The notes under the pieces were generated by a model, which ran no database searches, was not told the origin of the DNA, and worked only from the letters and a program-made list of their open reading frames with translations. From Scyliorhinus canicula (Eukaryota), in assembly GCF_902713615.1 (NCBI RefSeq), contig NC_052151.1:118764123-118828122 (forward strand): a DNA stretch of 64,000 nucleotides, in the 5' to 3' direction. Of this stretch, positions 2,096 through 63,365 are shown piece by piece (the stretch's first letter is position 1; each line of letters starts with the position of its first letter). A program made the translations under genes and the position numbers.

Positions 2096-3944
2096 TTAAA
2101 AATTGGTTATTTTGGTTTTTGGTTCCCCCACAGGGATTGTAACAATGGACAACCAGGAGTTCCCTGCGTACCTGTGTTGTTTGTGAAATCATTGATGGAA
2201 ACTCGGACTGAAATGTGCTGGGCTCATTTTACTTGAGCAAAGATGTCCCTGTAGATGATGCCAGAATGGAGCTAACTTTGTGATAAGTGATATCGACGTG
2301 CAACATTATTTCTATGTTCAATTCCCATTCTGGCTCTGTTCTCAGTCTCCAATGCTCTTCCAATGAAGCTCCAAAGAAACCTGAGAATAGCGCCCCATGA
2401 GCATTTACCATTGGGACTCAATAAGGAGTTCAACATTTTGAGATCAGAATTATTGCTCCTTTTTTGGACAGCAGGAGCTGGTAATAATAGTTCTGTTGCA
2501 ATTTACAGCTCCTCTAGACCCATCTTTTGTTTCTTATCCAATTCCTGTCCCCTTTCAACTTGTACCATTGACCCTTTTATCATTTTAGTCACTTCTGCCT
2601 TCTAACCTATCACAGACTTTTGTTCTGTTCTCCCCTCCTCTCCCCACCACCTTAAAACTTGTTATATTCCTAATGTCTTCCAATTCCCAACAAAAGGTTA
2701 CCGACCTGAAACATTGACTACGGGAGCAATTCTCCCAAATAATTTCTAAGTGTGTCTCTGGTGGGAAATTAGGTCAATTCCTGCCGGGTTGTTTGGCGCA
2801 ATGCAGTTTGTAATCTACCTATTTGGAGGTTGGGGTGAGCTGCACCCTGATTGAGGGACGCAGAGCTGAAGACGCCGGCAGGTCCGGCTCCTCCGAGATC
2901 TGGGCAACATTCATAAAGGAAGATCTTATCTCAGGAAAACTCTCAGCCCCCCACCCCGCCCCATTGCCAGTACCAGCACCCCCCCCTCTCAACCCCCCAC
3001 CCCGCCCCATTGCCAGTACCAGCAACCCCCCGCCCCGGTGAGCTATGGGGCTGGCCAAATACACCATTCCATGTTAGAACTGCCAAGGTGCCAGGGCACT
3101 GCGCTGTCATGTTTCCGACCAGCTGAGGGCTACAATGGTCTCCAAACCCACTCCCATCTGCATGGTCATCACTTTATTTTTTAAAATGACTTTTACTGAG
3201 TTATAAAGCGCGGGCTCAGAGTGTGGACAGGGGCGAACCCCTAATCCAACTCCTTGCCTGCTCCAAAAACCAATTCAAATTCAAATTGAATCCAATTCAT
3301 GGTCCCCACAAGTGAGACAAACCAGATCTGAGCCACAAGGCAGAGCAGATGCTGCTCTTGATCTTGGCCAAAAGGCCGAGAAGCGATATCACTTCTGATC
3401 TCCATCACTCTGGCTACACATTGCAACGACGGGTGGGAGAATTCCAGGAACCAGGAGAATCCGGCTTAAAACAGAACCTGCAGATTTAAATAAGGGTGTT
3501 GGGCACGAACCTGATCACGGCATCTGGAGCGGTCAAGGAACATCGGAAATTGATTGACACCCGGAGCAAGTCCTTTTTCAGGCCTCTCCCGGGATTTTCC
3601 CAACTTCGCAGAATTTGCGCTGGGAGCAATGCGGCTGGAGAATCGCCCCGCTGCTTCTCTACCTGTGCTGCCCAAATATTTCCAGAAGCTTCTGTTCATG
3701 TTGTACATTTAAGAACTGAACTTGTTCATCATTACTGACTTAACTAAATACAAATAACAGACTGATGCTTGAGCAAGATTTCTTCACTTGTGCCAGGCAT
3801 AGGTTGCTGTAAGCACATTAAATCTTGTCGAAGTTATAATTTGTGTTCTGCAATCTTTTCACTTCATGGTCATGCAGAAACTTAAACAGCATTTTGTCTC
3901 CAGCACGAGTCTGTTTAATGCCGTATGTTCATGTTTTTCAGAAC

Positions 3945-12588: not shown

Positions 12589-13430
12589 ACAACAATCCCT
12601 CTTGGACTCTCCCTGTTCCTCAATCTCTTCAGGCTCATCTTGTCCCCAATGAAATGGACAGGTTCAGTTGCTCTTGTTCTTCACTCCGTGAGGGAGTTAT
12701 TTCTTGCAGACCCACCCAACCAAATCCTTCAATGCCTCCAATCAGCCTCAATCTTTAATACAGGAAGATTCAACCTCATCTCTTATGCCCCATTCTTCAT
12801 TCTGGCCAATCAGCATCAAGCCTGCTCAGAACAAGATGTCTCCTTTGATGTTTGAATCTTCAATTCCCAAATCCTGATAGGAGAGCTTGAAAGGCAGAAC
12901 AATCAGATCAGAGGTGCCACCGTTCCATTAGCCTCGTTTAACAACCATGCAGTTATCAGATTCCATCTGTACCACTGACCTGCAAACAGTTAGATATCAG
13001 AGACCTGAATGAAGTTCAGGCACCAGATCAGACCATGTCAGTTCTCGACAGTCACACAATGTTCCCCCTCTCGAGAGGGGTGGGGGTGAACACCCTGGGA
13101 ATAGAGTGATCGCCCTCTTCAGGGGGTGGGTGATCTCCTAAGGAGAGAAGAAGACAGCCACACCAGCCAGGCCCAGCTCCACAAGAAGGTCCTAGACCTA
13201 CTCACATCCCCTTCCCCACAATGTGGCCAAACAGGGGTGGGAAGAGAAAGAGGGGGACTGAAATACAGAAAATTAACAGCCCTCACAGAAACAGCCCTTT
13301 CAAATAAGAACCATTCAAGGAGATGTGGTTCTTGCAGCTTTTGGGTGCACAAACCCCAGTCATTATTTCCATGGACTCAGACTAACCAAATACAGAGACC
13401 AATCAGCTCCCAGACACAAGGAATCACTGC

Positions 13431-13463
13431 TTTATTGATAATTCATTTGATCACTGCTTTATT
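13431..13463 (-). terminator. Two tandem polyadenylation signals of ZP3 copy A
   Basis: AATAAA at 13463-13458 and 13436-13431, produced by a 27-bp tandem duplication absent from B and C. Confidence 0.7.
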
Positions 13464-16333
13464 GATAATTAATTGGATCACCGAGTGAACAGAGTTTGAT
13501 TGCGTTTCCTGTACAGGAACAAGGTGATCAATGACGCAGAGATCAGAGAGACAGCTGTCACAGTCAGGGTCACGCTCAGGATTCACCTCAGACTCCACAC
13601 CTACAAACCAATGAGAAGCCAATGGTTAGTGAAGGAAACACTGAGGGGAAAATGGAAACCAGCAGTCAGCCAACTCACCACCTGGAGACCTCTCCTGCAT
13701 CCTTCCCTCATTCAGGGAGTCTGTTGCCAGGTTGGTCACATCAGTATCCAGAATGATCAGGGGTCCAAGTGAGGCCTCAGCCTCCCACTTCAATCCAACT
13801 TCATTCTCTGCAATATCAAACATTCCAGTTAGAGAGGGGAAAGGGGAAACGTCCACCATCTAGAGGATCAATATCCTACCAGCTTCAGCTACAAGATCTC
13901 TCCTTCCTCTGGATCCAAATCGCAGCTCCCTTGTGGCACAGTTACCCACATGGCAACAGGCACAAATGTCAATGCTCGATTCCTCCAATGGGGTCCAGCT
14001 AAGCGTGAAAAAAAATACCAGTCAACCAACTGCGTTGTGTATCACTTCTCCACAAAAACCCATCGGAGAGAGAGAGAGCGCACACTTACATATTCTGCAT
14101 CTTCTGGAAAGTACAAGCTTTGTTCTTGGAATCTTTCCGATCCACTGGAACTACTTTCAGGTGGCAGGTGATGAAAATCTGGAGGGAAACATCAGCACGT
14201 TGTTATTTAATGACTCCCTCCCAACACAGAGACACCAATGATCAGTTTCCTCTTACCAACGAACGGTCATCTCCAAAGAAACGGAATGCATCCAGGTCAA
14301 ACCGGAGCTTGTCCGTCTCCCGCTCGCCACTTGGCAACACAAAGGTTGAAAAGGAGTCCTCAGCTTTACTGTCCAGGAGGCAACTGAAGATAGATTAAAA
14401 AGGGACATGAAGTGAATCAAGTGAAGCCAGTGAGATGGGAGCAGCTGGAGAAAGCAGAGAGCTCCTTACCCACTGTAGTCAATGATGCTGTATCTCGGGG
14501 TGGAGTCCTTGTCTGGGCTCAATGTAGCTACACAGCGGTCAATGTAGAGCTTCAGGGGCATGTGGTTGCTCATTGAAACAGAGGCCTCAATGTGAATGAG
14601 GTCACCCAGGTAGTAGACAGTGGAAGTGCGCTCTGTAAGCCAGTCACCTGAAGAACAAGAGGACAAGGGTTGGAGACAGTGGGTGTCACTCCCAGTGAGT
14701 GAAGACAGGAAATCACTCCCCATCACATACCATTCATTAGGCGCAGAGAGAATGAAAGATGTCCTTCTCCAGACCTGGTGGAGCTGAATGGGATCCAGGT
14801 AGGCCTGATGGGGTTACTGCTCACATTGCCCTTCCTGGAAAGACAGCAGAGTCATTTTAGGACAACTTCAGAGAACATCAACAGCTGTGGATCTTATTCA
14901 GCATCCAATAAAGATTCTCACCTAAAGTAACGACACTCAATGGGAACGACAGCTCCATTCGTTCTCACAATGACAGATCCATGATACTCTGGGCTGTGGG
15001 TCAGGTGGGTGGTGTAGATCAGGAAATCTCCAGACATCTGAAAGACACCAGGTTAAGGAATGAAGAATTGATCTGAAAGGAGAAAGTTCTACACAGGGGT
15101 GAACAATGAACTCACCCCATCTAATTAATACAAGTCTCAAGGGGATTGACATGGTCAGCACAGAGAGGCTGCTGAGCCCCACATGGAGTGTCTATGCGGG
15201 GGGGGGGGGGGGGGGGGGGGCAGTGGGGTGTCAATCATTTAGGATAAACATGACAAAGAATTTCTTCATTTAGCAGCTCATGAATCATTTTAATTATCTA
15301 TCCCAGAAAGCTGGGAATGCTCAGTCACTGAGGATATTCAGGACAAATGGAATCAAAGGGTAGCACAGTAGCAGAGGGGGGTTAGCACAGCTGCATCACA
15401 GCACCAAGGTCACAGGTTCAATCCTGGCTCTGGGTCAGTGTCTGTGGTGAGTTTGCACATTCTCCATGTTTGCATGGATTTCACCCCCACAACCCAAAAG
15501 ATGTGCAGGGTAGGTGGACTGGCCACATTAAATTGCCCCTCAACTAGAACAAAAATGAATTGCATTGTGGAAAATCCAGCCCTGGTCTTAATGAATGGGG
15601 AACAGGCTGAAGAGTCTGTTCAGCCTCATCTTGTTATTAGTGTTGCTCAGCAACCTCCAGCCATTTAAACAAAGAGAGATCATTAGCACAAGACCAGGAT
15701 CAATTAACAGTGAATTGATTCAATAAAAGGACAGCTTCAGTTAACAGGAAAAGGAGCCACAAGTTGGCAATAATATGGAGCCTGGAAAAAGAATAGTTTC
15801 AATCCAGCTAGTTTGGGGGTTTAAGACACAGGAGACCAGTATCCTCAATATCAATGATATCTCACCAAGTGCTGGAATAAAGAGCGTAGAACAATCTCCA
15901 GCCAGGGCTTAGAGCCAGAGTTGAGGTTTGACATTACCTGCAATTTGCTGCCACACTCGTGGAGCCCATAGTCAAAGAGGACAGTGTGGTTCTGAGAGTA
16001 GATCCTGGTTGGCCGACAGCCTGCTGCCCCCAGGGTCAGGTCAGCAGCTTTAACCAGGTGCCTGGTTCCAAATAAATCCAGCTGGACCCTGACCAGCAGC
16101 TTGTCCTCTGCACACTGCACCACCACAGTCTGCAGTGGAGACACACTTTGACCCTCAGACACACGGAAATGGGAACCAAAGGGAGGAAGAGGGACTCTCT
16201 GAGGCACAGAGGTGGCTTTGACTCTGCTCCATGGAAACCTCTGGCCTCGAAACTGTTGCCAAGTATCAGAGGAACAAACAGTTCCAACTAACACCAGCAC
16301 TGGGAACAAAGCCCTCACTCCAAAATCCCCCAT
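13443..16333 (-). CDS. ZP3: ZP3-like (ZPC) egg-coat glycoprotein, copy A; 9 exons, 471 aa, frameshifted C-terminus without TM helix
   Basis: Exons (minus): 16333-15938, 15037-14922, 14834-14731, 14647-14470, 14383-14257, 14178-14090, 13998-13880, 13807-13679, 13600-13443; all GT-AG and in phase. Signal peptide [21 protein letters not shown]; ZP-N ([29 protein letters not shown]); [22 protein letters not shown]; ZP-C ([51 protein letters not shown]); ZP3-specific CACCHVGNC; furin site RGRR; EHP-like ASLGPLIIL. Exon 9 has +1 nt relative to copies B and C. Confidence 0.9.
15359..15565 (+). mobile_element. V-SINE in ZP3 intron 1 (A and B, not C)
   Basis: Head and core similar to 55510-55737. Confidence 0.7.
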
Positions 16334-16376
16334 GATACCAAACAACTGAACCATCCTGTCCACCAGGGAGCAGCAC

Positions 16377-16405
16377 CTTTTATACTCACAACCTGTACTC
16401 ACCTG
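16377..16405 (-). promoter_or_regulatory. ZP3 copy A core promoter: TATA box plus E-box
   Basis: TATAAAAG at 16384-16377, ~45 nt upstream of ATG 16333; CAGGTG E-box at 16405-16400 (E-boxes bound by FIGLA are established for vertebrate ZP promoters). Conserved in all three copies. Confidence 0.7.
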
Positions 16406-17514: not shown

Positions 17515-18712
17515 CATGAAACAAGACAATAGCTTACAATTATCCCTTAAACAATGCTAATGAATGCAGTGACACAATAACCCTTAACTGCTATCTTTAT
17601 TTCCACTCAAACAACAAAATTATCTCAGGTCACAATCCATTTTTAAATACGGTGAGCACTCAGGAATACTTGCGATATAGAGTTGTCTTGGATACTCGAC
17701 TTTGTGAAAGAGAGATCTTTTGAGACTGTTTGAAAGAAAGAGACCTGACACCCTGTCAGAGTAATGCAGAATCTCTGACTGTATTTCTTCAGAAACCTTC
17801 TCGGCTCAACTTCCAGCCAAAAGCTAACACTGAAAGCCTTAACATCTGACTGCTTCAACTCCTGGCTCCCATTAACTACATCATCTCACTAAGCTGAACA
17901 CAGTGCCTCTAAATATCTACGCTCCAGGGAACCTTCTGAATAGAAAATAACATTCCATTAACCCAAACCTTTATGATGCTTTAATTGCACCTCTGGTTCC
18001 AAAAACCCAAGCTGACTTTCAAATGAGGATTCTTAAAAACCAAATGCAACAAGACCTGGAAAATATCCAGGCTTGGAATGACAAGTGGCAAGTAACCTTC
18101 ATGCCACACAAGTGCCAGGAAGTGACCATCCCCAATAAGAGAGATTCTAACCATTGCCCCATGACATTCAATGGCACCACCGTCCACAAGGCACAAGTCA
18201 GGAATGTGATGGAATACTTTCCACTTACCTGGATGAATGCAGCTCCAAAGACAGTCAAGAAGCTTGACACCATCCAGGACAAAGCAGCCTGCATAATTGG
18301 GAAGATCTTATCTCAGGAACTCTCAGCCCCCCACCCCGCCCCATTGCCAGTACCAGCACCCTCCCCAGGTGAGTGACAGCTCGCTATGGGGATGGCAAAA
18401 TGCACCGCCCCGTGTTAGAACTGCCAAGGTGCCAGGGCACTGCACTGCCATGTTTCTGACCAGCTGAGGGCTAAAATGGTCTCTGAACCCACCCTCATCT
18501 GCATGGTCATCACTTCATTTTTTTATGGGCTCAGAGTGTGGACAGAGGTGAACCCCTAATCCAACTCCTTACCTGCTCCAAAAACCAATTAAAATTCAAA
18601 TTGAATCCAATTCATGGTCCCCACAAGTGAGACAAACCAGATCTGAGCCACAAGGCAGAGCAGATGCTGCTCTTGATCTTGGCCAAAAGGCCGAGAAGCA
18701 ATATCACTTCTG

Positions 18713-21455: not shown

Positions 21456-23210
21456 GACTTCCGGTTGCGACTATGCGGAGCTAAGCTGCACGTTCGGCAG
21501 CTCCCGCCAGGAATGGACCTTTGGGCTCTTTTAAGGGCCCCCAGCGGTACTTGCTCAACGGTTCCCGACGTGGGAAGGTGTCTGCAGCGGATCCCCAGTG
21601 GTCTATGGTCTTGACCAGGAGTGGGGCCAGCAAAATAGCGGTGGCAGCGCCTAAGAAAAAGCGGGGGAAGAGAATCAAGATGGCGGCCGACGGAGGCCTC
21701 GAGGAATGGAGGCAGTGGGCACAGGTGCAGCAGGAAACTCTCCAGAGATGTTTTCAGGAGATAAACGTGGAGCTGCTAGACTCGCTGAAGGCGAATGCGG
21801 ACAAGCTGCTGGCGACGCAGGCAGCCCAGTGGGTGGAGATCCGGGAGCTCCGACAACAAGCCTCCGAAAGAAAGGATGAGACCGCGGCCCTCGCGGTAAA
21901 GGTGGAGATGCATGCGGCGCTCCATAAGAAGTGGCAGGAGCGGTTCGAGGAGATGGAGAACCGGTCGAGGCGGAAAAATTTGCGGATCCTGAGCCTCACG
22001 GCGGGGCTGGAGGGGTCAGACCTGGGGGCCTATGTGGTTGTTTTGTTGAACTCGCTGATGGGAGCTGGGTCTTTCCAGGGCCCCTGGAGCTGGAAGGGGC
22101 CCACAGAATACTGGCCAGGAGGCCCAAGCCGAATGAGCCGCCACGGGCGGTGCTGGTGCGGTTCCACCGGTTCGCTGGCCGAGAGTGCGGAGTGGAGCAG
22201 CAAGTGGGAGAACACGGTAGTGCGGATCTACCAGGACTGGAGTGTGGAGTAGGCTAAGCGGAGGGCCAGGTACAACCGGACGAAGGCAGTGCTCCACAGA
22301 AAGAGTGTGAAGTTTGGCATGTTACAGCCGGCGCGTCTGTGGGTCACTTTCAAGGACTGTCACCATTATTTCGAGTCCCCGGAGGAGGCGTGGGCCTTTG
22401 TGCAGGCCGAGAAGTTGGACTCTGACTGAGGGTCGGGGGTTTGTAAATAACTGTGTTAACTTTTGGTCGGAAGGGTCTCTGTATTATGCTGTTTGAAGCT
22501 GTTTTAAGCTGTTTTATGCTGTTTTAAGCTGGTTGTGTGTTGGTTCTTTGGCGGGTGGGGTGCTGTCTTTTTTGCGTGGGCGGGGTCGGGCAGAGGGAAA
22601 GCGCGGGCTCTTCTTCTGTTTCCCGCGCTGAGGGTGGTTGGGGGCGGGGTCGGAGCTGAGAAGCGCGGGCTTTTTTCCCGCGCGAGAGCGGGAGGGGGAG
22701 GAGGAGGGTCTGCTGATGGGTCTGGGGGAGGAGGAGTAGCCCCACGTTGGGGGGGGATCGGAGGTGTGGCGGGAGTCGCCGGGGTCAGCAGAAGTTAGCT
22801 GGCTCACGGGAGTGCTACGGAGGGAGTAACGTGGCTGGGAGGAGTCCTAGACTGGGGGGGGGGAAGTGCGGGGGGGATGGGGCGGTACCAGTTTGCTGCT
22901 GAAATGGCCAGGAAGGAGCTGGAGTATGCAGGGGGGGCCGGGGTTGGGGGTTTGCCGCCGTGGGGAATGGGCCGAGCGGGGGGCACTGGCCTGGGGCGGG
23001 CAGGGGATGGGTTATGGCTAGTCGGCAGGGGAGGGGGCCAGGGAGCCCTCTGATCTGGCTGATAACTTGGAATGTGAGGGGGCTGAATGGGCCGGTCAAA
23101 CGGGCCCGGGTGTTTACGCACCTGAAGGGGCTGAAGGCGGACATGGCTATGCTCCAGGAGACGCACCTGAAGGTGGCGGACCAGGTTAGACTGAGGAAGG
23201 GCTGGGTAGG
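21456..23210 (+). mobile_element. 5' portion of the same L1 insertion in unit B
   Basis: Same left junction ATGAATAGATCGCCT|GACTTCCGG; ORF1, inter-ORF region and endonuclease start; cut by a Gypsy LTR at 23211. Confidence 0.92.
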
Positions 23211-32209: not shown

Positions 32210-34394
32210 ACATAGAACATAGAACACTACAGCGCAGTACGGGCCCTTTGGCCCTCGATGTTGCGCCGACCTGTGAAACCATCTGAAGCCTATCTGACCT
32301 ACACTATTCCATTTTCCATCCATATGTCTATCCAGTGACCACTTAAATGCCCTTAAAGTTGGTGAGTCTACTACTGTTACAGGCAGGGAGTTCCACACCC
32401 CTACTACTCTCTGAGTAAAGAAACTGCCTCTGACATCTGTCCCATGTGTATCACCCCTCAATTTAAAGCTATGTCCCCTCGCATTGGTCATCACCATCCG
32501 AGGAAAAAGACCCACTGTCCACCCTATCTAACCCTCTGACTATCTATTAAGTCACCTCTCAGCCTTCTCCTCTCTAAACGAAAACAACCTCAATTCCCCG
32601 AGCCTTTCCTCGTAAGACCTTCCCCCCATACCAGGCAACATCCTAGTAAATCTCCTCTGAACCCTTTCCAAAGCTTCCACATCCTTCCTATAATGTGGTG
32701 ACCAGAACTGCACGCAGTACTCCAGGTGTGGCCACACCAGAGTTATGTACAGCTGCAGCATGACCTTGTGGTTCTGAAACTCAATCCCCCTGCTTATAAA
32801 GGCTAGGACACCATATGCCTTCTTAACAGCCCTATTTACCTGGGTGGCAACTTTCAGGGATTTATGTACCTGGATGCCAAGATCTCGGTTCATCTACACT
32901 ACCAAGAATCTTGCCATTAGCCCAGTACTCTGCATTCTTGTTACTCCAGTACTCTGCATTCTTGTTACTCCTTCCAAAGTGAACCACCTCACACTTTTCT
33001 GCATTAAACTCCATCTGCCACCTCTCAGCCCAGCTCTGCAGCTTATCTATGTCCCTCTGTATCCTATAACATCCTTCAGCACTATCCACAACTCCACCGA
33101 CCTTCGTGTCATCTGCAAATTTACTACCCCATCCTTCTACACCCTCTTCCAGGTCATTTATAAAAATGACAAACAGCAGTGGCCCCAAAACAGATCCTTG
33201 CGGTACACCACTAGTAACTGAACTCCAGGATGAACATTTGCCATCAACCACCACCCTCTGTCTTCTTTCAGCTAGCCAATTACTGATCCAAACCGCTAAA
33301 TCACCTTCAATCCCATACTTCCTTATTTTCTGCAATAGCCTACCATGGGGAACCTTATCAAACGCCTTACTGAAATCCATACACACCACATCAACAGCTT
33401 TACCCTGATCCACCTGTTTGGTCACCTTCTCAAAAAACTCAATAAAGGTTTGTGAGGCATGACCTACCCTTCACAAAACCGTGTTGAGTATCGCTAATCA
33501 ACTTGTTCTTTTCAAGATGATTATAAACCCTATCTCTTATAACCTTTTCCAACATTTTACCCACAACCGAAGTAAGGCTCACAGGTCTATAATTACCAGG
33601 GTTGTCTCTACTCCCCTTCTTGAACAAGGGGACAACATTTGCTATCCTCCAGTCTTCCGGCACTATTCCTGTCGACATAAAGATCAAGGACAAAGGCTCT
33701 GCAATCTCCTCCCTGGCTTCCCAGAGAATCCTAGGATAAATCCCATCTGGCCCAGGGGACTTATCTATTTTGACATTTTCTAAAATTGCTAACACCTCCT
33801 CCTTTTGAACCTCAATTCCATCTAGCCTGGTCGACTGAACCAGAGTGTTCTCCTCGACAACATTGTCTTTCTCCAGTGTAAACACTGACGAAAAATATCC
33901 ATTTAACGCTTCCCCTATCTCCTCTGATTCCACACACAACTTTCCACTACTATCCTTGATTGGCCCTAATCTTACTCTAGTCATTCTTTTGTTCCTGATA
34001 TATCTATAGAAAGCCTTAGGACATGATCCTATCCGCCAACGACTTTTAGTGTCCTCTCCTCGCTTTTCTTAACTCCCTTTTGGTCCTTCCTGGCTAACTC
34101 TCAAGTGCCCTAACTGAGCCTTCATGTCTCATCCTAACATAAGCCTTCTTCCTCTTGACAAGTGCTTCAACTTCCTTAGTAAACCACAGTTCCCTTGCTC
34201 GACAACTTCCTCCCTGCCTGACAGGTACATACTTATCAAGACACGCAGTAGCTGTTCCTTGAAAAAGCTCCACATTTCGATTGTACCCATCCCCTGCAGT
34301 TTCCTTCCCCATCCTATACATCCTAAATCTTGCCGAATAGCATCATAATTACCTTTCTCCCAGCTATAATTCTTGCCTTGCGGTATATACCTAT
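32210..34394 (-). mobile_element. 5'-truncated CR1 LINE (B-specific)
   Basis: ORF2 motifs KSPGPDGIYP, NYRPVSLTS, DFSKAFDKVPH, SGVPQGSVLGP, KFADD, VQFWSPH; (TTCTATG)n tail; empty site at A 12839/12840 and in C. Confidence 0.93.
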
Positions 34395-34966: not shown

Positions 34967-37900
34967 TCACTGGGTGAACAGAGTTGGATTGCGTTTCCTG
35001 TACAGGAACAAGGTGATCAATGAAGCAGAGATCAGAGAGACAGCTGTCACAGTCAGGGTCACGATCAGGACCACCTCAGACTCCACACCTACAAACCAAT
35101 GAGAAGCCAATGGTTAGTGAAGGAAACACTGAGGGGCAAATGGAAACCAGCAGTTAGCCAACTCACCACTTGGGGACCTCTCCTGCATCCTTCCCTCAAT
35201 CAGGGAGTCCGTTGCCAGGTTGGTCACATCAGTATCCAGAATGATCAGGGGTCCAAGTGAAGCCTCAGCCTCCCACTTCAATCCAACTTCATTCTCTGCA
35301 ATATCAAACATTCCAGTTAGCGAGGGGAAAGGGGAAACCTCAACCATCTAGGAGGACCAATATCCTACCAGCTTCAGCTACAAGATCTCTCCTTCCTCTG
35401 GATCCAAATCGCAGCTCCCTTGTGGCACAGTTACCCAAACGGCAACAGGCACAAATGTCAATGCTCGATTCCTCCAATGGGGTCCAGCTAAGCAAGACAA
35501 AAATCAGTCAACAAACTGTATTGTGCATCACTTCTTCACAAAAGCTCAGAAGAGCGCGAGAGCTTACATATTCTGCATCTTTTGGAAAGTACAAGCTTTG
35601 TTCCTGGAATCTCTCCGATCCACTGGAGCTACTTTCAGGTGACAGGTGATGAAAATCTGAGGGAAACATCAACACTGTTATTTAATGCCTCCCTCCCAAC
35701 ACAGACCCCAATGATCAGTTTCCTCTTACCAAGGAACGGTCATCTCCAAAGAAACGGAATGCATCCAGGTCAAACCGGAGCTTGTCCGTCTCCCGCTCGC
35801 CACTTGGCAACACAAAGGTTGAAAAGGAGTCCTCAGCTTGGCTGTCCAGGAGGCAACTGAAGATAGATTAAAAAGGGACATGAAGTGAATCAAGTGAAGC
35901 CAGTGAGAGGAGAGCAGCTGGAGAAAGCAGAGAGCTCCTTACCCATTGTAGTCAATGATGCTGTATCCCGGGGTAGAATCCTTGTCTTGGCTCAATGTGG
36001 CTACACAGCGGTCAATGTAGAGCTTCAGGGGCATGTGGTTGCTTATTGAAACAGAGGCCTCAATGTGAATGAGGTCACCCAGGTAGTAGACAGTGGAAGT
36101 GCGCTCTGTAAGCCAGTCACCTGAAGAACAAGAGGACAAGGTTTGGAGACAGTGGGTGTCACTCCCAGTGAGTGAAGACAGGAAATCACTCCCCATCACA
36201 TACCATTCATTAGGCGCAGAGAGAATAAAAGATGTCCTTCTCCAGACCTGGTGGAGCTGAATGGGATCCAGGTAGGCCTGATGGGGTTACTGCTCACATT
36301 GCCCTTCCTGGAAAGACAGCAGAGTCATTTTAGGACAACTTCAGAGAACACCAACAGCTGTGGATCTTATTGGGCATCCAATAAAGATTCTCACCTAAAG
36401 TAACGACACTCAATGGGAACTTCAGCTCCATTCGTTCTCACAATGACAGATCCATGATACTCTGGGCTGTGGGTCAGGTGGGTGGTGTAGATCAGGAAAT
36501 CTCCAGACATCTGAAAGACATCAGGTTAAGGAATGAAGAACTGATCTGAAATGAGAAAGTTCTACACAGGGGTTAACAATGAACTCACCCCATCCAATTA
36601 ATACAAGTCTCAAGGGGATTGACATGGTCAGTGCAAAGAGGCTGCTGAGCCCCAGCTGGTGTGTCTATGCAGTGGGATGTCAATCATTTAGGATAAAAAT
36701 GACAAAGAATTTCTTCATTTAGCAGTTCATGAATCATTTTAATTATCTATCCCAGAAAGCTGGGAACGCTCAATCACTGAGGATATTCAGGACAAATGGA
36801 ATCAGAAAGCAGCACAGTGGTGAAAGGGGTTAGCACAGCTGCATCACAGCACCAAGATCCCAGGTTTAATCCTGGCTCTGGGTCACTGTCTGTAGTGAGT
36901 TTGCACATTCTCCCTGTGTTTGAATGGATTTCACCCCCACAACCCAAAAGGGGCAGCACAGTAGTTAGCATAAATGCTTCACAGCTCCAGGGTCCCAGGT
37001 TCAGTTCCCGGCTGGGTCACTCTGTGCGGAGTCTGCACGTCCTCCCAGTGTGTGCGTGGGTTTCCTCCAGGTGCTCCGGTTTCCTCCCACAGTCAAAGAT
37101 GTGCGGGTTAGGTGGATTGGCCATGCTAAATTGCCCGTAGTGCCCTTGTGAGGTTAAGGGGGGGTTGTTGGGTTACAGGTATAGGGTGGATACGTGGGTT
37201 TGAGTAGGGTGATCATTGCTCGGCACAACATCGAGGGCCGAAGGGCCTGTTCTGTGCTGTACTGTTCTATTTTATTTTATGTGCAGGCTAGGTAGACTGG
37301 CCACATTATATTGCCCCTTAACTGGAACAAAAATTGCATTGTGGAAAATCCAGCCCTGGTCTTAATGAAGGAGGAACAGGCTGAAGGGGCTGTTCAGCCT
37401 CATCTTGTTATTAGTGTTGCTCAGCAACCTCCAGCCATTTATATAAAGAGATAATTAGCACAAGACCAGGATAAATTAACAGAGAATTGATTCAATAAAA
37501 GGACAGCTTCAGTTAACAGAAAAAGGAGCCACAAGTTAATAATATGGAGCCTGGAAATTGAACAGTTTCAATCCAGGGCCCCATTGATTCCAATGACTGG
37601 GAAAATGGGAAGTGTGGATTTTCTGTTTGGTCCAATCCATCAGAATTCCCATTCCATTCATTAACACCCAACCCAATTGGATTAAACTGGACTGAAACTT
37701 AACCCCCAGTTCAATTGATGTGAATGAGGGGGAAATAGAGCTGAAAATCAACAAGAGGAAAAGCTCAGAGGAACCAAAGGAAAGCTTCCAGACCAATGGG
37801 GTTGAAGAGACTCAGACCAGTGGAAGCAAAGAACAATCCAGAATAGAAAGCTAGTTTGGGGGTTTAAAGACATAGGAGACCAGTATCCTCAATATCAATG

Positions 37901-38377
37901 ACATCTCACCAAGTGTTGGAAGAAAGAATGCAGCCCAATCTCCAGCCTAAGCTTAGAGCCAGAGTTGAGGTTTGACATTACCTGCAATTTGCTGCCACAC
38001 TCATGGAGCCCATAGTCAAAGAGGACAGTGTGGTTCTGAGAGTAGATCCTGCTTGGCCGACAGCCTGCTGCCCCCAGGGTCAGGTCAGCAGCTTTAACCA
38101 GGTGCCTGGTTCCAAATAAATCCAGCTGGACCCTGACCAACAGCTTGTCCTCTGCACACTGCACCATCACAGTCCGCAGTGGAGACACACTTTGACCCTC
38201 AGACACACGGAAATGGGAACCAAAGGGAGGAAGAGGGACTCTCTGAGGCACAGAGGTGGCTTTGACTCTGCTCCATGGAAACCTCTGGCCTCGAAACTGT
38301 TGCCAAGTATCAGAGGAACAAACAACTCCAACTAACACCAGCACTGGGAACAAAGCTCTCACTCCAAAATCCCCCAT
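34967..38377 (-). CDS. ZP3: ZP3-like (ZPC) egg-coat glycoprotein, copy B; 9 exons, 459 aa, intact with TM helix
   Basis: Exons (minus): 38377-37982, 36510-36395, 36307-36204, 36120-35943, 35856-35730, 35656-35568, 35487-35369, 35295-35167, 35088-34967 (396/116/104/178/127/89/119/129/122 nt = 1380). Same motifs as copy A; ends [40 protein letters not shown]; AATAAA at 34952-34947. Confidence 0.93.
36951..37278 (+). mobile_element. HE1-like V-SINE with CR1-type tail, nested in an older SINE in ZP3-B intron 1
   Basis: V-core plus tail GGGCCGAAGGGCCTGTTCTGTGCTGTACTGTTCTAT; empty at A 15500/15501. Confidence 0.85.
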
Positions 38378-38420
38378 GATACCAAACAACTGAACCATCC
38401 CATCCACCAGGGAGCAGCAC

Positions 38421-41847: not shown

Positions 41848-43600
41848 CTACACTTTCCATCACGTGTTTTGTGCTGTTTGATCATGGCAACTGGTGAATG
41901 TGCTGGGCTCATTTTACTCGGGCAAAGATGTCCCTGTTGATGATGCCAGAATGGAGCTGACTTGGTGATAAGTGATATTGACGTGCAACATTATTTCTAT
42001 GTTCAATTCCCATTCTGGCTCTGTTCTCAGTCTCCAATGCTCTTCCAATGAAGCTCCAAAGAAACCTGAGAATAGCGCCCCATGAGCATTTACCATCTGG
42101 ACTCAATAAGGAGTTCAACATTTTGAGATCACAATTATTGCTCGTTTTTTGGATAGCAGGAGCTGGTAATAATCGTGCTGTTGCAATTTACAGCTCCTCT
42201 CGACCCATCTTTTGTTTCTTATCCAATTCCGGTCCCCTTTCAACTTGTATTATTGACCCTTTTATCATTTTAGTCACTTCTGCCTTCTAACCTATCACAG
42301 ACTTTTGTTCTGTTCTCCCCTCCTCTCCCCAGCACCTTAAAACTTGTTATATTCCTAATGTCTTCCAATTCCCAACAAAAGGTTACCAACCTGAAACATT
42401 GACTACGGGAGCAATTCTCCCAAAACATTTCTAAGTGTGTCTCTGGTGGGAACCGAGGTCAATTCCTGCCGGGTGGTTTGGCGCAATGCAGATCGCAATC
42501 TACGTACAATTAGAATGTTGTTTGGAGGTTGGGGTGAGCTGCACCCTGATTGGGGGGCGCAGAGCTGAAGACGGCGGCAGGTCCGGCTCCTCCGAGATCG
42601 GGGCACAATTCTTCAAGGAAGATCTGATCTCAGACAAACGCTCAGCCCCCCACACCGCCCCATTGCCAGTACCAGCACCCCCCCAGGTGAGTGACAGCTC
42701 GCTATGGGGATGGCAAAATGCACCACCCCGTGTTAGAACTGCCAAGGTGCCAGGGCACTGCACTGCCATGTTTCTGACCAGCTGAGGGCTACAATGGTCT
42801 CTGAACCCACCCTCATCTGCGTGGTCATCACTTCATTTTTTTAAATTACTTTTACTGAGTTATAAAGTGAGGGCTCAGACTGTGGACAGGGGCGAACCCC
42901 AAATCCAACTCCTTGCCTGCTCCAAAAACCAATTCAAATTCAAATTGAATCCAATTCATGGTCCCCACAAGTGAGACAAACCAGATCTGAGCCACAAGGC
43001 AGAGCAGATGCTGCTCTTGATCTTGGCCAAAAGGCCGAGAAGCGATATCACTTCTAATCTCCATCAGTCTGGCTACACATTGCACCGGCGGGTGGGAGAA
43101 TTCCAGGAACCAGGAGAATCCGGCTTAAAACAGAACCTGCAGATTTAAATAAGGGTGTTGGGCACGAACCTGATCACGGCATCTGGAGCGGTCAAGGAGC
43201 ATCGGAAATTGATTGACACCCGGCGCAAATCCCTTTTCAGGCCTCTCCCGGGATTTTCCCGACTTTGCAGAATTTGCGCTGGGCGCAATGCGCCTGGAGA
43301 ATCGCCCCGCTGTTTCTCTACCGGTGCTGCCCAAATATTTCCAGAAGTTTCTGTTCATGTTGTACCTTTAAGAACTGAACTTGTTCATCATTACTGACTT
43401 AACTAAATACAAATAACAAACTGATGCTTGAGCAAGATTTCTTTACATGTGCCAGGCATAGGTTGCTGTAAGCACATTGAATCTTGTGGAAGTTATAATT
43501 TGCCTTTTGTAATATTTTCACTACATGGTCATGCAGAAACTTAAACTGCATTTTGTCTCCAGCACAAGTCTGTTTAATGCCGTATGTTCATGTTTTTCAG

Positions 43601-52068: not shown

Positions 52069-52986
52069 AACAAAGAAAATTACAGCACAGGAACAGGCCC
52101 TTCGGCCCTCCCAGCCTGCGGCGATCCAGATCCTTTATCTGAACCTGTCTCCTATTTTCCAAGGTCTACTTCCCTCTGTTCCCGCCCATTCATATACCTG
52201 TCTAGAAGCTTCTTAAATGATGCTATCGTGCCCGCCTCTACCACCTCCGCTGGTAAAGCGTTCCAGGCACCCACCACCCTCTGCGTAAAAAACTTTCCAC
52301 GCACATCTCCCTTAAACTTTCCCCCTCTCACCTTGAAATCATGACCCCCCTTGTAACTGACACCCACACTCTTGGGAAAAGCTTGTTGCTATCCACCCTG
52401 TCCATACCTCTGATAATTTTGTAGACCTCAATCAGGTCCCCCCTCAACCTCCGTCTTTCCAATGAAAACAATCCTAATCTACTCAACCTTTCTTCATAGC
52501 TAGCACCCTCCATACCAGGCAACATCCTGGTGAACCTCCTCTGCACCCTCTCCAAGGCATCCACATCCTTCTGGTAATGTGGCGACCAGAACTGCATGCA
52601 GTATTTCAAATGTGGCCGAACCAAAGTCCTATACAACTGTAACATGACCTGCCAACTCTTGTACTCAATACCCCGTCCGATGAAGGCAAGCATGCTGTAT
52701 GCCTTCTGAACCACTCTATCAACCTGCGTTGCCACCTTCAGGGTACAATGGACCTGAACTCCCAGATCTCTCTGCACATCAATTTTCCCCAAGACCCTTC
52801 CATTGACCATATAGTCCGCTCTTGAATTTGATCTTCCAAAATGCATCACCTCGCATTTGCCTGGATTGAACTCCATCTGCCATTTCTCTGCCCAACTCTC
52901 CAATCTATCTATATTTTGTTGTATTCTCTGACAGTCCAACTCGCTATCTGCAACTCCACCAATCTTAGTATCATCTGCAAACTTGC
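52069..52986 (-). mobile_element. 5'-truncated CR1 LINE (C-specific)
   Basis: SKFADDTKIGG..LERVQRRFTRM..LRGDLIEVYKI; flanked by TAAT on both sides; empty site in A and B. Confidence 0.92.
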
Positions 52987-60380: not shown

Positions 60381-63322
60381 TTAATTTGATGACTGGGTGA
60401 ACAGAGTTTGATTGCGTTTCCTGTACAGGAACAAGGTGATCAATGAAGCAGAGATCAGAGAGACAGCTGTCACAGTTAGGGTCACGATCAGGATCACCTC
60501 AGACTCCACACCTACAAACCAATGAGAAGCCAATGGTTAGTGAAGGAAACACTGAGTGGGAAATGGAAACCAGCAGTCAGCCAACTCACCACCTGGAGAC
60601 CTCTCCTGCATCCTTCCCTCATTCACAGAGTCTGTTGCCAGGTTGGTCACATCAGTATCCAGAATGATCAGGGGTCCAAGTGAGGCCTCAGCCTCCCACT
60701 TCAATCCAACTTCACTCTCTGCAATATCAAAACATTCCAATCAGAGGTGGGGGAAAAAGAGGAAACCCCCAACATCCAAGATGATCAATGTCCTACCAGC
60801 TTCAGCTACAAGATCTCTCCTTCCTCTGGATCCAAATCGCAACTCCCTTGTGGCACAGTTACCCACATGGCAACAGGCACAAATGTCAATGCTCGATTCC
60901 TCCAATGGGGTCCAGCTAAGCAAGACAAAAATCAGTCAACCAACTGTATTGTGCATCACAACAAAAGCCCATTTGAGAGAGAGCTTACATATTCTGCATC
61001 TTCTGTAAAGTACAAGCTTTGTTCCTGGAATCTCTCCGATCCACTGGAGCTACTTTCAGGTGACAGGTGATGAAGATCTGAGGGAAACATCAACACGCCG
61101 TTATTTAATGACTCCCTCCCAACACAGACCCCAATGATCAGTTTCCTCTTACCAAGGAACGGTCATCTCCAAAGAAACGGAATGCATCCAGGTCAAACCG
61201 GAGCTTGTCCATCTCCCGATCGCCACTTGGCAACACAAAGGTTGAAAAGGAGTCCTCAGCTTGGCTGTCCAGGAGGCAACTGAAGATAGATTAAAAAGGG
61301 ACATGAAGTGAATCAAGAGGAAGCCAGAGAGATGGGAGCAGCTGGAGAAAGCAGAGAGCTCCTTACCCATTGTAGTCAATGATGCTGTATCTCGGGGTGG
61401 AGTCCTTGTCTGGGCTCAATGTAGCTACACAGCGGTCCATGTAGAGCTTCAGGGGCATGTGGTTGCTCATTGAAACAGAGGCCTCAATGTGAATGAGGTC
61501 ACCCAGGTAGTAGACAGTGGAAGTGCGCTCTGTAAGCCAGTCACCTGAAGAACAAGAGAACAAGGGTTGGAGACAGTGGGTGTCACTCCCAGTGAGTGAA
61601 GACAGGAAATCACTCCCCATCACATACCATTCATTAGGCGCAGAGAGAATGAAAGATGTCCTTCTCCAGACCTGGTGGAGCTGAATGGGATCCAGGTAGG
61701 CCTGATGGGGTTACTGCTCACATTGCCCTTCCTGGAAAGACAGCAGAGTCATTTTAGGACAACTTCAGAGAACATCAACAGCTGTGGATCTTATTGGGCA
61801 TCCAATAAAGATTCTTACCTAAAGTAACGACACTCAATGGGAACGACAGCTCCATTTGTTCTCACAATGACAGATCCATGATACTCTGGGCTGTGGGTCA
61901 GGTGGGTGGTGTAGATCAGGAAATCTCCAGACATCTGAAAGACACCAGGTTAAGGAATGAAAAACTGATCTGAAATGAGAAAGTTCTACACAGGGGTTAA
62001 CAATGAACTCACCCCATCCAATTGAAACAATTCACAGGGATTGGCAGGGTCAGCACAAAGAGGCTGCTGGGCCCCAGCTGGAATGGGGGGGGGGGTTATC
62101 TCAGGTCATGGGTCTTAATTTAGGATAAACATAGCAATGATTTTCTTCATTGAGTAGCTCATGAATCTTAGGAATTCTCTATCCCAGAGAGCTGGGAACA
62201 CTGTCAGTGGATATTCAGGACAGATGGATTTTTGGACATCAAGGGAATCAAGTTGAGGACAAGGACATGAGGGGTTGTGGAAAGTCCAGCCCTGATCTTA
62301 ATTAATGGGGTCCAGCCCTTATCTTAATGATCAGGGAAAAGGCTGGAGGGTCTCTGTGGCCTCATCTTCAAAGAGATTAGCACAAGACCAGGATCAATTA
62401 ATAGGGAATTGATTCAATAAAAGGACAGCTTCAGTTAACAGGAAAAGGAGCCACAAGTTAACAATAATATAGAGCCCGGAAATAGAAGTTTTGGTCCAGG
62501 GCCCCATTGATTCCAATGACTGGGAAAGTGAAAGTGTGGAGTTCCTCTTTTTTCCAATCCATATGAATTCCCATTTCATCCTGTTCATTAACACCCAACC
62601 CAATTGGATTAAACTGGACTGAAACTGAACCCTCAGTTCAATTGATCTGAATGAGGGGGAAATAGAGCTGAAAATCAACAAGAGGAAAAGCTCAGAGGAA
62701 CCAAAGAGAAGCTTCCAGACCAATGTGGTTGATGTCACAACAGTGAAGAGACTCAGACCAGTGGAAGCAAAGTACAATCCAGAAAAAAAAAGCTAGTATG
62801 GGGGGGTTGATGAATCAGACCACCAGTATTTCCTCTATATCAATGACATCTCACCAAGTGTTGGAATAAAGAGTGTGGAACAATCTCCAGCCTAAGCTTA
62901 GAGCCAGAGTTGAGGATTGACATTACCTGCAATTTGCTGCCACACTCATGGAGCCCATAGTCAAAGAGGACAGTGTGGTTCCGAGAGTAGATCCTGGTTG
63001 GCCGACAGCCTGCTGCCCCCAGGGTCAGGTCAGCAGCTTTAATCAGGTGCCTGGTTCCAAATAAATCCAGCTGGACCCTGACCAACAGCTTGTCCTCTGC
63101 ACACTGCACCATCACAGTCCTCAGTGGAGACACACTTTGACCCTCAGACACACGGAAATGGGAACCAAAGGGAGGAAGAGGGACTCTCTGAGGCACAGAG
63201 GTGGCTTTGACTCTGCTCCATGGAAACCTCTGGCCTCGAAACTGTTGCCAAGTATCAGAGGAACAAACAGTTCCAACTAACATCAGCACTGGGAACAAAG
63301 CCCTCACTCCAAAATCCCCCAT
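60381..63322 (-). CDS. ZP3: ZP3-like (ZPC) egg-coat glycoprotein, copy C; 9 exons, 462 aa, intact with TM helix
   Basis: Exons (minus): 63322-62927, 61934-61819, 61731-61628, 61544-61367, 61279-61153, 61077-60989, 60915-60797, 60718-60590, 60511-60381. Ends ..[38 protein letters not shown]; AATAAA at 60375-60370. Confidence 0.93.
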
Positions 63323-63365
63323 GATACCAAACAACTGAACCATCCTGTCCACCAGGGAGCAGCAC

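What the first reader, a model, noticed from the sequence alone, without database searches (positions are those of the whole stretch)
13431..13600. Transmembrane-less ZP3 paralog built by three mutually compatible last-exon changes
Seen: (1) +1 nt at ~13582 (GAGGTGAATCCTG vs GAGGTGATCCTG in C) shifts frame just before the TM helix, giving ..[49 protein letters not shown]. (2) This frame reads through the original stop and AATAAA and on its own would give a non-stop mRNA. (3) A-specific 27-bp duplication adds a second AATAAA (13436-13431). (4) A T>G change in the second repeat (AAATTA>AAATGA) creates an in-frame stop at 13445-13443, just upstream of that new signal. Exons 1-8, all Cys, the furin site and the EHP are intact, and a last-exon change escapes NMD. 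Established: several liver-made teleost egg-envelope proteins lack the TM domain and travel as soluble precursors. Inference: independent origin of a soluble ZP3 in a shark-like lineage rather than simple pseudogenisation.
Basis: partly seen in the sequence, partly recalled or inferred. Interest (0 to 1): 0.8.

Follow-up and report, generated by a model that had tools for sequence, protein, structure and literature searches.

The report
Catshark ZP3 copy lacking membrane anchor
One of three tandem egg-coat (ZP3) genes in this small-spotted catshark window has a one-base insertion that swaps its membrane anchor for an unrelated 46-residue tail; the sequence facts hold, but nothing shows it is a working soluble egg-coat protein rather than a young decaying copy or an assembly slip.

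Summary
The window is Scyliorhinus canicula DNA with three tandem 9-exon ZP3-like genes on the minus strand, A, B and C. Copy A alone has an extra A at 13583/13582, a 27-bp tandem duplication (13481-13428) that gives two AATAAA signals, and a T>G at 13444 that creates TGA 13445-13443. The transmembrane helix is lost. Exons 1-8, the splice sites, 13 Cys, the RGRR furin site, the hydrophobic patch (EHP) and the TATA/E-box promoter are intact.

- The duplication is not needed. The same T>G in an unduplicated copy would also place a stop before the polyA signal. The duplication also leaves one AATAAA inside the new reading frame.
- A chance stop among six neutral substitutions has P of about 0.2.
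- The frameshift is the only lesion, and the old frame is otherwise intact, so A could be young or an assembly error.
- A-specific changes are patchy (P = 2e-6), which points to gene conversion, so the intact exons do not prove selection on A.
- The new tail was found nowhere else. Every other Scyliorhinus paralog I could see keeps the helix, apart from one alternative-end S. torazame model, one truncated low-quality one and P0240.

I rate a young decaying or neutral copy at about 0.55, a functional soluble ZP3 at about 0.25 and an assembly artefact at about 0.13. Reads and RNA-seq would decide.

The parts
13443..16354 (-). ZP3-like gene copy A. Nine exons: 16354-15938, 15037-14922, 14834-14731, 14647-14470, 14383-14257, 14178-14090, 13998-13880, 13807-13679, 13600-13443. 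The reading frame is 478 aa.
   Evidence: Three-way alignment and gene model. Pfam ZP-N on exon 1 scores 31.2 bits and ZP-C on exon 4 scores 48.1 bits. Exon 1 matches chicken ZP3 structure 3NK3 at E = 1.6e-14.
13582..13583 (-). A-specific +1 insertion: AA where C has a single A and B has G. It shifts the frame 17-18 nt into exon 9, just before the transmembrane codons.
13446..13583 (-). New-frame tail of 46 codons (aa 433-478, [11 protein letters not shown]...NKAVIK). It is hydrophilic, contains 3 Cys and has no transmembrane helix.
   Evidence: No Pfam match. No database protein carries this tail.
13443..13445 (-). New in-frame stop TGA, created by T>G at 13444 in duplication unit 2.
13478..13480 (-). 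The original-frame stop TGA, at the same place as the stop of copy B and still present. Apart from the extra base, the old frame of A still encodes the helix and the cytoplasmic tail.
   Evidence: (frame 0 segment 13582-13481).
13428..13481 (-). A-specific 27-bp tandem duplication (unit 1 13481-13455, unit 2 13454-13428), bounded by the GTGAT microhomology.
   Evidence: (period 27, 2.2 copies, 93% matches).
13458..13463 (-). Proximal AATAAA. It now lies inside the reading frame (codons N-K), 12 nt upstream of the stop and 38 nt from the GU-rich element.
13431..13436 (-). Distal AATAAA, 6 nt after the stop. Its spacing to the GU-rich element is the same as in B and C.
13411..13419 (-). GU-rich downstream element TGTGTCTGG, conserved in A, B and C.
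   Evidence: Its role is inferred from the general model of vertebrate polyadenylation.
13899..13910 (-). Consensus furin cleavage site RGRR (aa 374-377).
   Evidence: Conserved in elasmobranch homologs.
13749..13775 (-). External hydrophobic patch ASLGPLIIL (aa 395-403).
   Evidence: The GPL(I/V/L)(I/L)L motif is conserved across the elasmobranch ZP3 tails listed.
16377..16405 (-). Promoter elements shared by A, B and C: E-box CAGGTG at 16405-16400 and TATAAAAG at 16384-16377, 23 nt upstream of the ATG.
   Evidence: Function is inferred from what is known of mammalian Zp promoters (my own knowledge).
34967..38398 (-). Copy B, 466 aa, with the transmembrane helix. Residues 78-466 are identical to XP_038655925.1.
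60381..63343 (-). Copy C, 469 aa, with the transmembrane helix. Residues 78-469 are identical to XP_038655926.1.

Best explanation
Copy A is a real but evolutionarily young frameshift variant of one member of a large, redundant tandem array of ZP3 egg-coat genes in Scyliorhinus canicula. A single inserted base removes the transmembrane anchor and cytoplasmic tail. The ribosome then reads an accidental frame through the old stop into what used to be the 3' UTR, and stops at a TGA that arose there by an ordinary substitution. The 27-bp duplication is an unrelated replication-slippage event in that UTR. The copy is most likely a neutral or decaying paralog (an incipient pseudogene, possibly still polymorphic). 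On this view the rest of the gene looks intact because the lesion is recent and because gene conversion from neighbouring copies keeps overwriting parts of it, not because a soluble product is selected.

Shown: the lesion, the loss of the helix, the intact remainder, the patchy divergence and the family context. Inferred: the youth of the lesion, its neutrality and the lack of function.
For: - The frameshift is the only lesion. The old frame still reads a complete helix and ends at the stop used by B. In that old frame the four A-specific substitutions are 2 synonymous and 2 replacement.
- The family is large. Seven further S. canicula RefSeq proteins, none of them B or C, sit in one 90% cluster of 33 members of which only 15 are listed, and all map to the same 226-Mb chromosome.
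- 7 of 7 S. canicula and 7 of 10 S. torazame tails examined in these clusters (two more models lacked the landmark motif) keep the helix with near-identical sequence, so the helix is under constraint in this family; the exceptions are P0238, P0235 and the frameshifted P0240.
- A separate frameshift inside the helix, into the same alternative frame, occurs in S. torazame GCB85169.1 (P0240). Such lesions therefore recur.
- The new tail has three extra Cys. On the A branch it changed by about 4 replacements to 1 silent change in the new frame. It is found in no other protein.
- The stop has a chance probability of about 0.21. The duplication is not required and puts an AATAAA inside the reading frame.
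- A-specific substitutions are strongly patchy: 17 in 362 sites across exon 5 to intron 6, against 1 in 398 sites across exon 7 to intron 8, introns included (chi-square P = 2e-6). The shape of the tree in exons also differs from that in the flanks. Both point to gene conversion, which can keep a dead copy looking alive.
- In mammals the transmembrane domain is needed for proper trafficking and incorporation into the coat, and human ZP2 lacking it gives a thin or absent coat (PMC8391237, PMC8005149).
Against: - Exons 1-8 carry no second lesion, although the neutral divergence of the A branch is about 2% and about 0.5% of neutral sites carry frame-breaking indels.
- The A branch has 7 replacement and 5 silent changes, all conservative, and is no worse than B (12:9) or C (10:4).
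- Exons 2-8 changed at 0.93% against 2.4% for introns 2-8.
- Promoter and splice sites are intact.
- The frame does end before the distal polyA signal, which has the native context.
- Under a uniform-rate model the data favour continued constraint by a factor of 4 to 80. The patchiness found violates that model.
Confidence: 0.55

Rival explanations
1. This is the reader's hypothesis: a functional, secreted, anchor-less ZP3. Copy A would be transcribed from its intact promoter and polyadenylated at the distal signal. It would be translated into a precursor with signal peptide, ZP module, furin site and EHP but no anchor. The precursor would be secreted as a soluble protein, like the liver-made ZP proteins of teleosts. 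Cleavage at RGRR would then remove the whole aberrant tail, so the mature protein would be a normal ZP3.
For: - The reading frame is intact, with a stop before the distal AATAAA and native spacing to the GU-rich element.
- Exons 1-8, all Cys, the furin site, the EHP, the promoter and the splice sites are intact.
- Exon divergence is below intron divergence, and replacement to silent changes are 7:5.
- There is no second lesion despite about 2% neutral divergence.
- The exon-9 substitution rate (6 in 180 nt) is at the neutral level, which suggests the tail lost constraint some time ago.
- Teleosts set a precedent (PMC8362008).
- RefSeq predicts ZP3 models with an EHP but no transmembrane helix in five other elasmobranchs (P0115, P0148, P0151, P0178, P0238).
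Against: - There is no expression or protein evidence.
- The tail is unique to this one copy and is not conserved.
- The A/B/C split postdates the canicula-torazame split, so no ortholog can confirm retention.
- Gene conversion confounds every constraint test.
- The proximal AATAAA inside the reading frame could still give non-stop mRNAs.
- Three new Cys sit in the propeptide.
- The promoter is the same as in the anchored copies, so there is no sign of a change in expression site.
- In the mouse, anchor-less ZP3 is secreted but not incorporated into the coat (my own knowledge of Jovine et al. 2004 and Jimenez-Movilla and Dean 2011; those papers were not held).
Confidence: 0.25
2. Assembly or polishing artefact. 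The extra A would be a consensus error in a long-read assembly of a roughly 95%-identical tandem array. Copy A would really be an ordinary anchored ZP3 whose 3' UTR carries a harmless 27-bp duplication and a harmless T>G.
For: - Removing one base gives a perfectly normal 466-aa ZP3 that uses the same stop as copy B.
- Every other A-specific feature would then lie in the 3' UTR or be a mild change.
- Tandem paralogs are hard to polish (my own knowledge).
- I could not find a RefSeq protein for A among the 15 listed members of its 33-member cluster.
Against: - The site is an AA dinucleotide, not a long homopolymer.
- In the old frame A also carries Ile>Ser inside the helix and Gln>Arg in the tail. 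Four substitutions in 120 nt compare with 0.7 expected under the constraint seen in B and C, which hints at real relaxation.
- There are no N or gaps nearby.
Confidence: 0.13

Closest known systems
Canonical vertebrate ZP3 (ZPC), for example chicken ZP3 (PDB 3NK3/3NK4) and the neighbouring catshark copies B and C (XP_038655925.1, XP_038655926.1)
   Same: Signal peptide, ZP-N, ZP-C, the Cys pattern, the furin site and the EHP. The 9-exon structure is the same as in neighbouring copies B and C. Copy C matches chicken ZP3 at E = 3e-101. A is 97% identical to S. canicula paralogs over aa 1-432.
   Different: A lacks the transmembrane helix and cytoplasmic tail. Its last 46 residues come from an alternative frame plus former 3' UTR.
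Teleost ZP1/ZP3 (choriogenin-type) egg-envelope precursors without a transmembrane domain
   Same: On paper the same architecture: a ZP module, a cleavage site and a C-terminal hydrophobic patch, with no membrane anchor (PMC8362008).
   Different: In teleosts the state is old, shared across species and coupled to liver expression and transport in blood. Here it is one copy in one species, made by a frameshift, with the same promoter as its anchored neighbours, an unconserved 46-residue tail and no expression data.
Human ZP gene truncations and frameshifts that remove the transmembrane domain or C-terminal propeptide (for example ZP2 R698X, ZP3 R349Lfs)
   Same: A late-exon lesion leaves the ZP module intact but removes the anchor (PMC8391237).
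   Different: Those are disease alleles that give a thin or absent zona in single-copy genes. In the catshark there are many redundant paralogs, so the same lesion may be nearly neutral.
Predicted anchor-less ZP3 isoforms of other elasmobranchs (RefSeq models P0115, P0148, P0151, P0178, P0238)
   Same: They retain the EHP and end without a helix. Read-through of intron 8 in A, B and C would give a similar end..[20 protein letters not shown].
   Different: These arise from alternative processing of genes that also encode the anchored form, and they are annotation-level predictions. In A the anchored form cannot be made at all.
S. torazame GCB85169.1 (P0240)
   Same: A frameshift in the last exon into the same alternative frame (..[31 protein letters not shown]).
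   Different: The shift occurs 12 codons later, inside the helix. It is an independent event in another species and a draft assembly. The model is partial with no stop, and no DNA could be fetched.

Membership tests
ZP3 (ZPC) egg-coat subunit | N-terminal signal peptide | tested here: met
   Hydrophobic stretch at aa 4-29 (Kyte-Doolittle 19-residue maximum 1.79) behind the first ATG. This is a simple hydropathy test only.
ZP3 (ZPC) egg-coat subunit | ZP module: ZP-N plus ZP-C of the ZP3 type | tested here: met
   PF23344 on exon 1 scores 31.2 bits (cut-off 24.7). PF00100 on exon 4 scores 48.1 bits (cut-off 24.6). Best solved structure is chicken ZP3.
ZP3 (ZPC) egg-coat subunit | Conserved cysteine pattern | tested here: met
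   13 Cys at identical positions in A, B and C. The Cys align with chicken ZP3, including the CxCC...C motif.
ZP3 (ZPC) egg-coat subunit | Consensus furin site followed by the external hydrophobic patch | tested here: met
   RGRR at aa 374-377 and ASLGPLIIL at aa 395-403. Both are conserved in homologs.
ZP3 (ZPC) egg-coat subunit | C-terminal transmembrane helix and short cytoplasmic tail | tested here: not met
   The hydropathy maximum of the A tail is 0.74, against 2.35 in B and C.
ZP3 (ZPC) egg-coat subunit | Expression in oocyte or follicle and presence in the egg envelope | not testable with these tools
   No transcript or proteome data could be reached. NCBI shark records returned no DNA.
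Soluble ZP precursors without a transmembrane domain (teleost choriogenin type) | Anchor absent while the cleavage site and hydrophobic patch are kept | tested here: met
   (at the level of the reading frame only).
Soluble ZP precursors without a transmembrane domain (teleost choriogenin type) | Anchor-less state conserved among orthologs or paralogs | tested here: not met
   Most other Scyliorhinus tails seen keep the helix (14 of 17; the exceptions are two S. torazame models with other ends, P0238 and P0235, and the frameshifted P0240). The A tail was found in no other protein. The A lineage postdates the species split.
Soluble ZP precursors without a transmembrane domain (teleost choriogenin type) | Synthesis outside the ovary (liver) and delivery through blood | not testable with these tools
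   No expression data. The promoter is identical to that of the anchored copies.
Decaying paralog (young pseudogene) | Lesion that removes an element conserved in functional paralogs | tested here: met
   The +1 insertion removes the helix.
Decaying paralog (young pseudogene) | Neutral evolution or further lesions in the rest of the gene | tested here: inconclusive
   No further lesion, and 7 replacement to 5 silent changes. The rate tests are confounded by the gene-conversion mosaic.
Decaying paralog (young pseudogene) | Loss of expression or unstable mRNA | not testable with these tools
   No RNA data.

The most novel reading that the evidence does not exclude
Copy A is an expressed, selectively retained, anchor-less ZP3. 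That would be an independent origin, in a cartilaginous fish, of the soluble egg-coat precursor strategy known from teleosts. It would have been caught at a very early stage, only about 2% neutral divergence after duplication. Furin cleavage would discard the accidental tail, so the mature protein would be normal.
Probability: 0.25. Interest if true: 0.6.

Novelty: new member of a known kind. Interest (0 to 1): 0.3.

Why it matters
If copy A were shown to be expressed and incorporated into the envelope, it would be a natural experiment. The question is whether the membrane anchor of ZP3 is dispensable once redundant anchored paralogs exist. It would also be a snapshot of the first step towards the anchor-less, remotely synthesised egg-coat precursors of teleosts.

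If it is a young pseudogene or an assembly slip, it is an ordinary by-product of birth-and-death evolution in a large tandem gene array. Its use is then mainly to flag the locus for curation. As it stands, the finding shows how an attractive multi-step story can rest on one lesion plus two incidental changes in the 3' UTR.

Tried and rejected
- **Searching for the A tail in proteins.** The 59-aa exon-9 reading frame found no candidate. The alternative-frame tail of P0240 (region 200-243) scored nothing.
- **Finding the RefSeq product of A.** The 90% cluster has 33 members but only the same 15 are listed each time. The full spliced A protein has no reference, so I did not type it in and left the exact look-up out.
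- **Fetching S. canicula or S. torazame DNA around paralogs.** The records are too large and no DNA was returned.
- **Scanning for A-specific or exon-9 DNA.** Scans of metagenome and prokaryote genome contigs found nothing, as expected.
- **Uniform-rate Poisson test of constraint after the frameshift.** It gave factors from 0.03 to 120 depending on the assumed constraint and indel load. I rejected it as decisive because A-specific changes are patchy.
- **Rescue of the old frame by an alternative splice site.** I checked by eye around the exon 8 donor and the exon 9 acceptor. No AG or GT gives the needed shift of -1 or +2.
- **Literature.** Jovine 2004 and Jimenez-Movilla 2011 are not held. No paper on elasmobranch ZP3 arrays was found.
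Full report
**What is in the window**

The window contains a tandem segmental repeat of about 21-25 kb (self-comparison). Each unit carries one compact 9-exon gene on the minus strand. These are copy A (16354-13443), copy B (38398-34967) and copy C (63343-60381). The spacers hold only LINE/reverse-transcriptase debris and a weak U2-like element per unit.

The genes are ZP3:
- Exon 1 hits Pfam ZP-N and exon 4 hits ZP-C above the curated cut-offs.
- Exon 1 matches the chicken ZP3 structure 3NK3 at E = 1.6e-14.
- The product of copy C matches it at E = 3e-101.

Residues 78-466 of B and 78-469 of C are identical to Scyliorhinus canicula XP_038655925.1 and XP_038655926.1. Both lie on a 226-Mb chromosome of GCA_902713615.2. 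The 'shark-like lineage' is therefore the small-spotted catshark. There are no N in the window.

**The observation**

- A has AA at 13583-13582 where C has A and B has G. This shifts the frame 17-18 nt into exon 9.
- B and C then encode a typical helix ([25 protein letters not shown]) followed by RKRN.. . A instead encodes 46 unrelated hydrophilic residues.
- The hydropathy maximum is 0.74 in A and 2.35 in B and C.
- A has a 27-bp tandem duplication (units 13481-13455 and 13454-13428). It gives AATAAA at 13463-13458 and at 13436-13431.
- A T>G at 13444 makes TGA 13445-13443. Without it the frame runs to 13379-13377, 52 nt beyond the last AATAAA.
- Exons 1-8 have identical lengths and canonical splice sites in all three copies. 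The 13 Cys, RGRR (aa 374-377) and the [12 protein letters not shown] (aa 395-403) are conserved.
- An E-box and TATA box sit unchanged 23-50 nt upstream of the ATG.

**Is the combination more than chance?**

Three points weaken the 'three mutually compatible changes' reading.

First, the duplication is not needed. In a single unit the same TTA>TGA change would stop the shifted frame 8 nt before the only AATAAA.

Second, the duplication leaves the proximal AATAAA inside the reading frame, as codons N-K, with its last base 12 nt before the stop. Cleavage directed by that signal could still fall at or before the stop. Only the distal signal keeps the native 11-nt spacing to the conserved GU-rich element TGTGTCTGG. 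Distal use is therefore likely, but that is an inference.

Third, 19 of the 486 possible single-base changes upstream of the distal signal would create an in-frame stop. With the six A-specific substitutions seen in exon 9, at least one stop is expected with P of about 0.21.

The order of events cannot be recovered. If the UTR changes came first, the frameshift simply ran into a stop that was already there.

**Is A under selection?**

In flanks and introns the tree is ((A,B),C). The A branch is about 2.0% (56 of 2807 sites).

Evidence that looks like constraint:
- Exons 1-8 of A changed at 12 of 1279 sites (7 replacements, 5 silent, all conservative). This is below the neutral expectation of 25.5 (P = 0.002).
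- A is no worse than B (12:9) or C (10:4).
- Exon 9 of A has six substitutions plus two indels in about 180 nt. That is the neutral rate and well above the 1.0 expected under the constraint seen in B and C.
- Neutral sequence on the A branch also carries about 0.5% frame-breaking indels, yet exons 1-8 have none.
- Under a uniform-rate model these numbers favour 'tail relaxed early, rest still constrained' over 'whole gene neutral since the frameshift'. The factor is 4 to 80, but it drops below 1 if the background constraint is as strong as on the C branch.

I do not accept that model, for two reasons.
- A-specific substitutions are very unevenly spread: 17 in 362 sites in exon 5 to intron 6, 1 in 398 sites in exon 7 to intron 8 (introns included), and 3 in 654 sites in exon 2 to intron 4 (chi-square 34.4, P = 2e-6).
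- In the gene body the three branches are about equal. In intron 1 and the flanks, C is three times more distant.

This is the signature of repeated gene conversion among array members. Conversion can erase lesions and divergence in a dead copy, and it makes 'age since frameshift' undefined.

The old frame of A is also otherwise perfect. It still has the helix and the stop at 13480-13478, which is the stop used by B. Two of its four A-specific changes are silent in that frame. That fits a recent event, or a one-base assembly error.

**Family context**

Seven further S. canicula RefSeq ZP3-like proteins, none of them B or C, lie in one 90%-identity cluster of 33 members, of which only 15 could be listed, and S. 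torazame has its own set. In a protein tree the S. torazame proteins group together, apart from the S. canicula ones (support 88/97). The A/B/C split therefore postdates the species split, or has been homogenised since, and no ortholog of A can test retention.

7 of 7 S. canicula and 7 of 10 S. torazame tails examined in these clusters keep a nearly invariant helix (two S. torazame models lacked the landmark motif). The exceptions:
- S. torazame GCB85169.1 (P0240) has an independent frameshift inside the helix into the same alternative frame.
- S. torazame P0238 ends without a helix after an alternative exon end, and P0235 is a truncated 'low quality' model.
- A few RefSeq models in Heterodontus, Chiloscyllium, Pristiophorus, Hypanus and S. 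torazame stop after the EHP through alternative processing.

Intron-8 read-through would do the same in A, B and C. The A tail itself was found in no other protein. I could not establish how RefSeq treats copy A.

**Mechanism and biology**

If A is transcribed and cleaved at the distal site, its precursor would enter the secretory pathway, lack an anchor and carry three extra Cys in the propeptide. Cleavage at RGRR would remove the whole aberrant tail, leaving a mature ZP3 that differs from B and C by a few conservative residues.

Two lines of published evidence bear on this:
- Teleost ZP1 and ZP3 have lost the transmembrane domain together with a move to liver expression (PMC8362008).
- In mammals the propeptide elements, including the transmembrane domain, control trafficking and incorporation, and human ZP2 lacking it gives a thin or absent zona (PMC8391237, PMC8005149).

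A has the same promoter as its anchored neighbours, so nothing suggests a change of tissue.

One consequence for testing: tail peptides are not expected in the mature coat.

**Verdict**

| Explanation | Probability |
|---|---|
| Young, neutral or decaying paralog | about 0.55 |
| Functional soluble ZP3 | about 0.25 |
| Assembly artefact | about 0.13 |
| Other | remainder |

As things stand this is a new member of a known kind, a frameshifted copy in a birth-and-death gene array. Interest is modest (0.3). It would rise to about 0.6 if expression and incorporation were shown.

Noticed in passing
window 3203-3387, 18478-18702, 42847-43046 (minus strand): Each repeat unit carries a weak full-length match to U2 snRNA (Rfam RF00004, 51-53 bits against a gathering score of 46). 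It is probably a U2-derived pseudogene or repeat copied along with the unit.
   Followed up: no
window 44874-50142 (+), 21521-22252 (+), 32862-33984 (-), 52328-53242 (-): The spacers between the ZP3 copies hold LINE-type ORF1 and reverse-transcriptase reading frames broken by frameshifts. The roughly 5-kb element at 44.9-50.1 kb accounts for most of the extra length of the B-C unit.
   Followed up: partly
window 38398-38167 and 63343-63112 (5' part of exon 1 of B and C): The RefSeq models for B and C start at Met78 and so lack a signal peptide. An in-frame ATG with a signal peptide lies 77 codons upstream, just behind a TATA box and an E-box. The annotated N-termini look truncated. Copy A has Val at position 78.
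   Followed up: partly
window 14383-13999 versus 13998-13601: A-specific substitutions cluster in exon 5 to intron 6 (17 in 362 sites) and are almost absent from exon 7 to intron 8 (1 in 398 sites). This is a gene-conversion mosaic within copy A.
   Followed up: yes
protein P0122: A 461-aa shark-type ZP3, 86% identical to A, is deposited as 'zona pellucida domain-containing protein, partial [Salmonella enterica]' on a 1415-bp contig. It is evidently a contaminating shark cDNA in a bacterial assembly.
   Followed up: no
protein P0240 (S. torazame GCB85169.1): An independent frameshift inside the transmembrane helix leads into the same alternative frame as in copy A (..[22 protein letters not shown]..). 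The model is partial with no stop. No DNA could be fetched, so real lesion and draft-assembly error cannot be told apart.
   Followed up: partly
window 13679-13626 (intron 8 of A) and the same place in B and C: Read-through of intron 8 would end all three proteins after the EHP with ..[20 protein letters not shown] and no helix. RefSeq models with comparable ends exist in five other elasmobranch species.
   Followed up: partly
window 15198-15220; B 36950-37279 and 37576-37849: Intron 1 differs greatly between copies. A has a 23-nt poly-C run on the gene strand. B has a roughly 330-bp SINE-like insertion. B and C share about 270 bp that A lacks.
   Followed up: no
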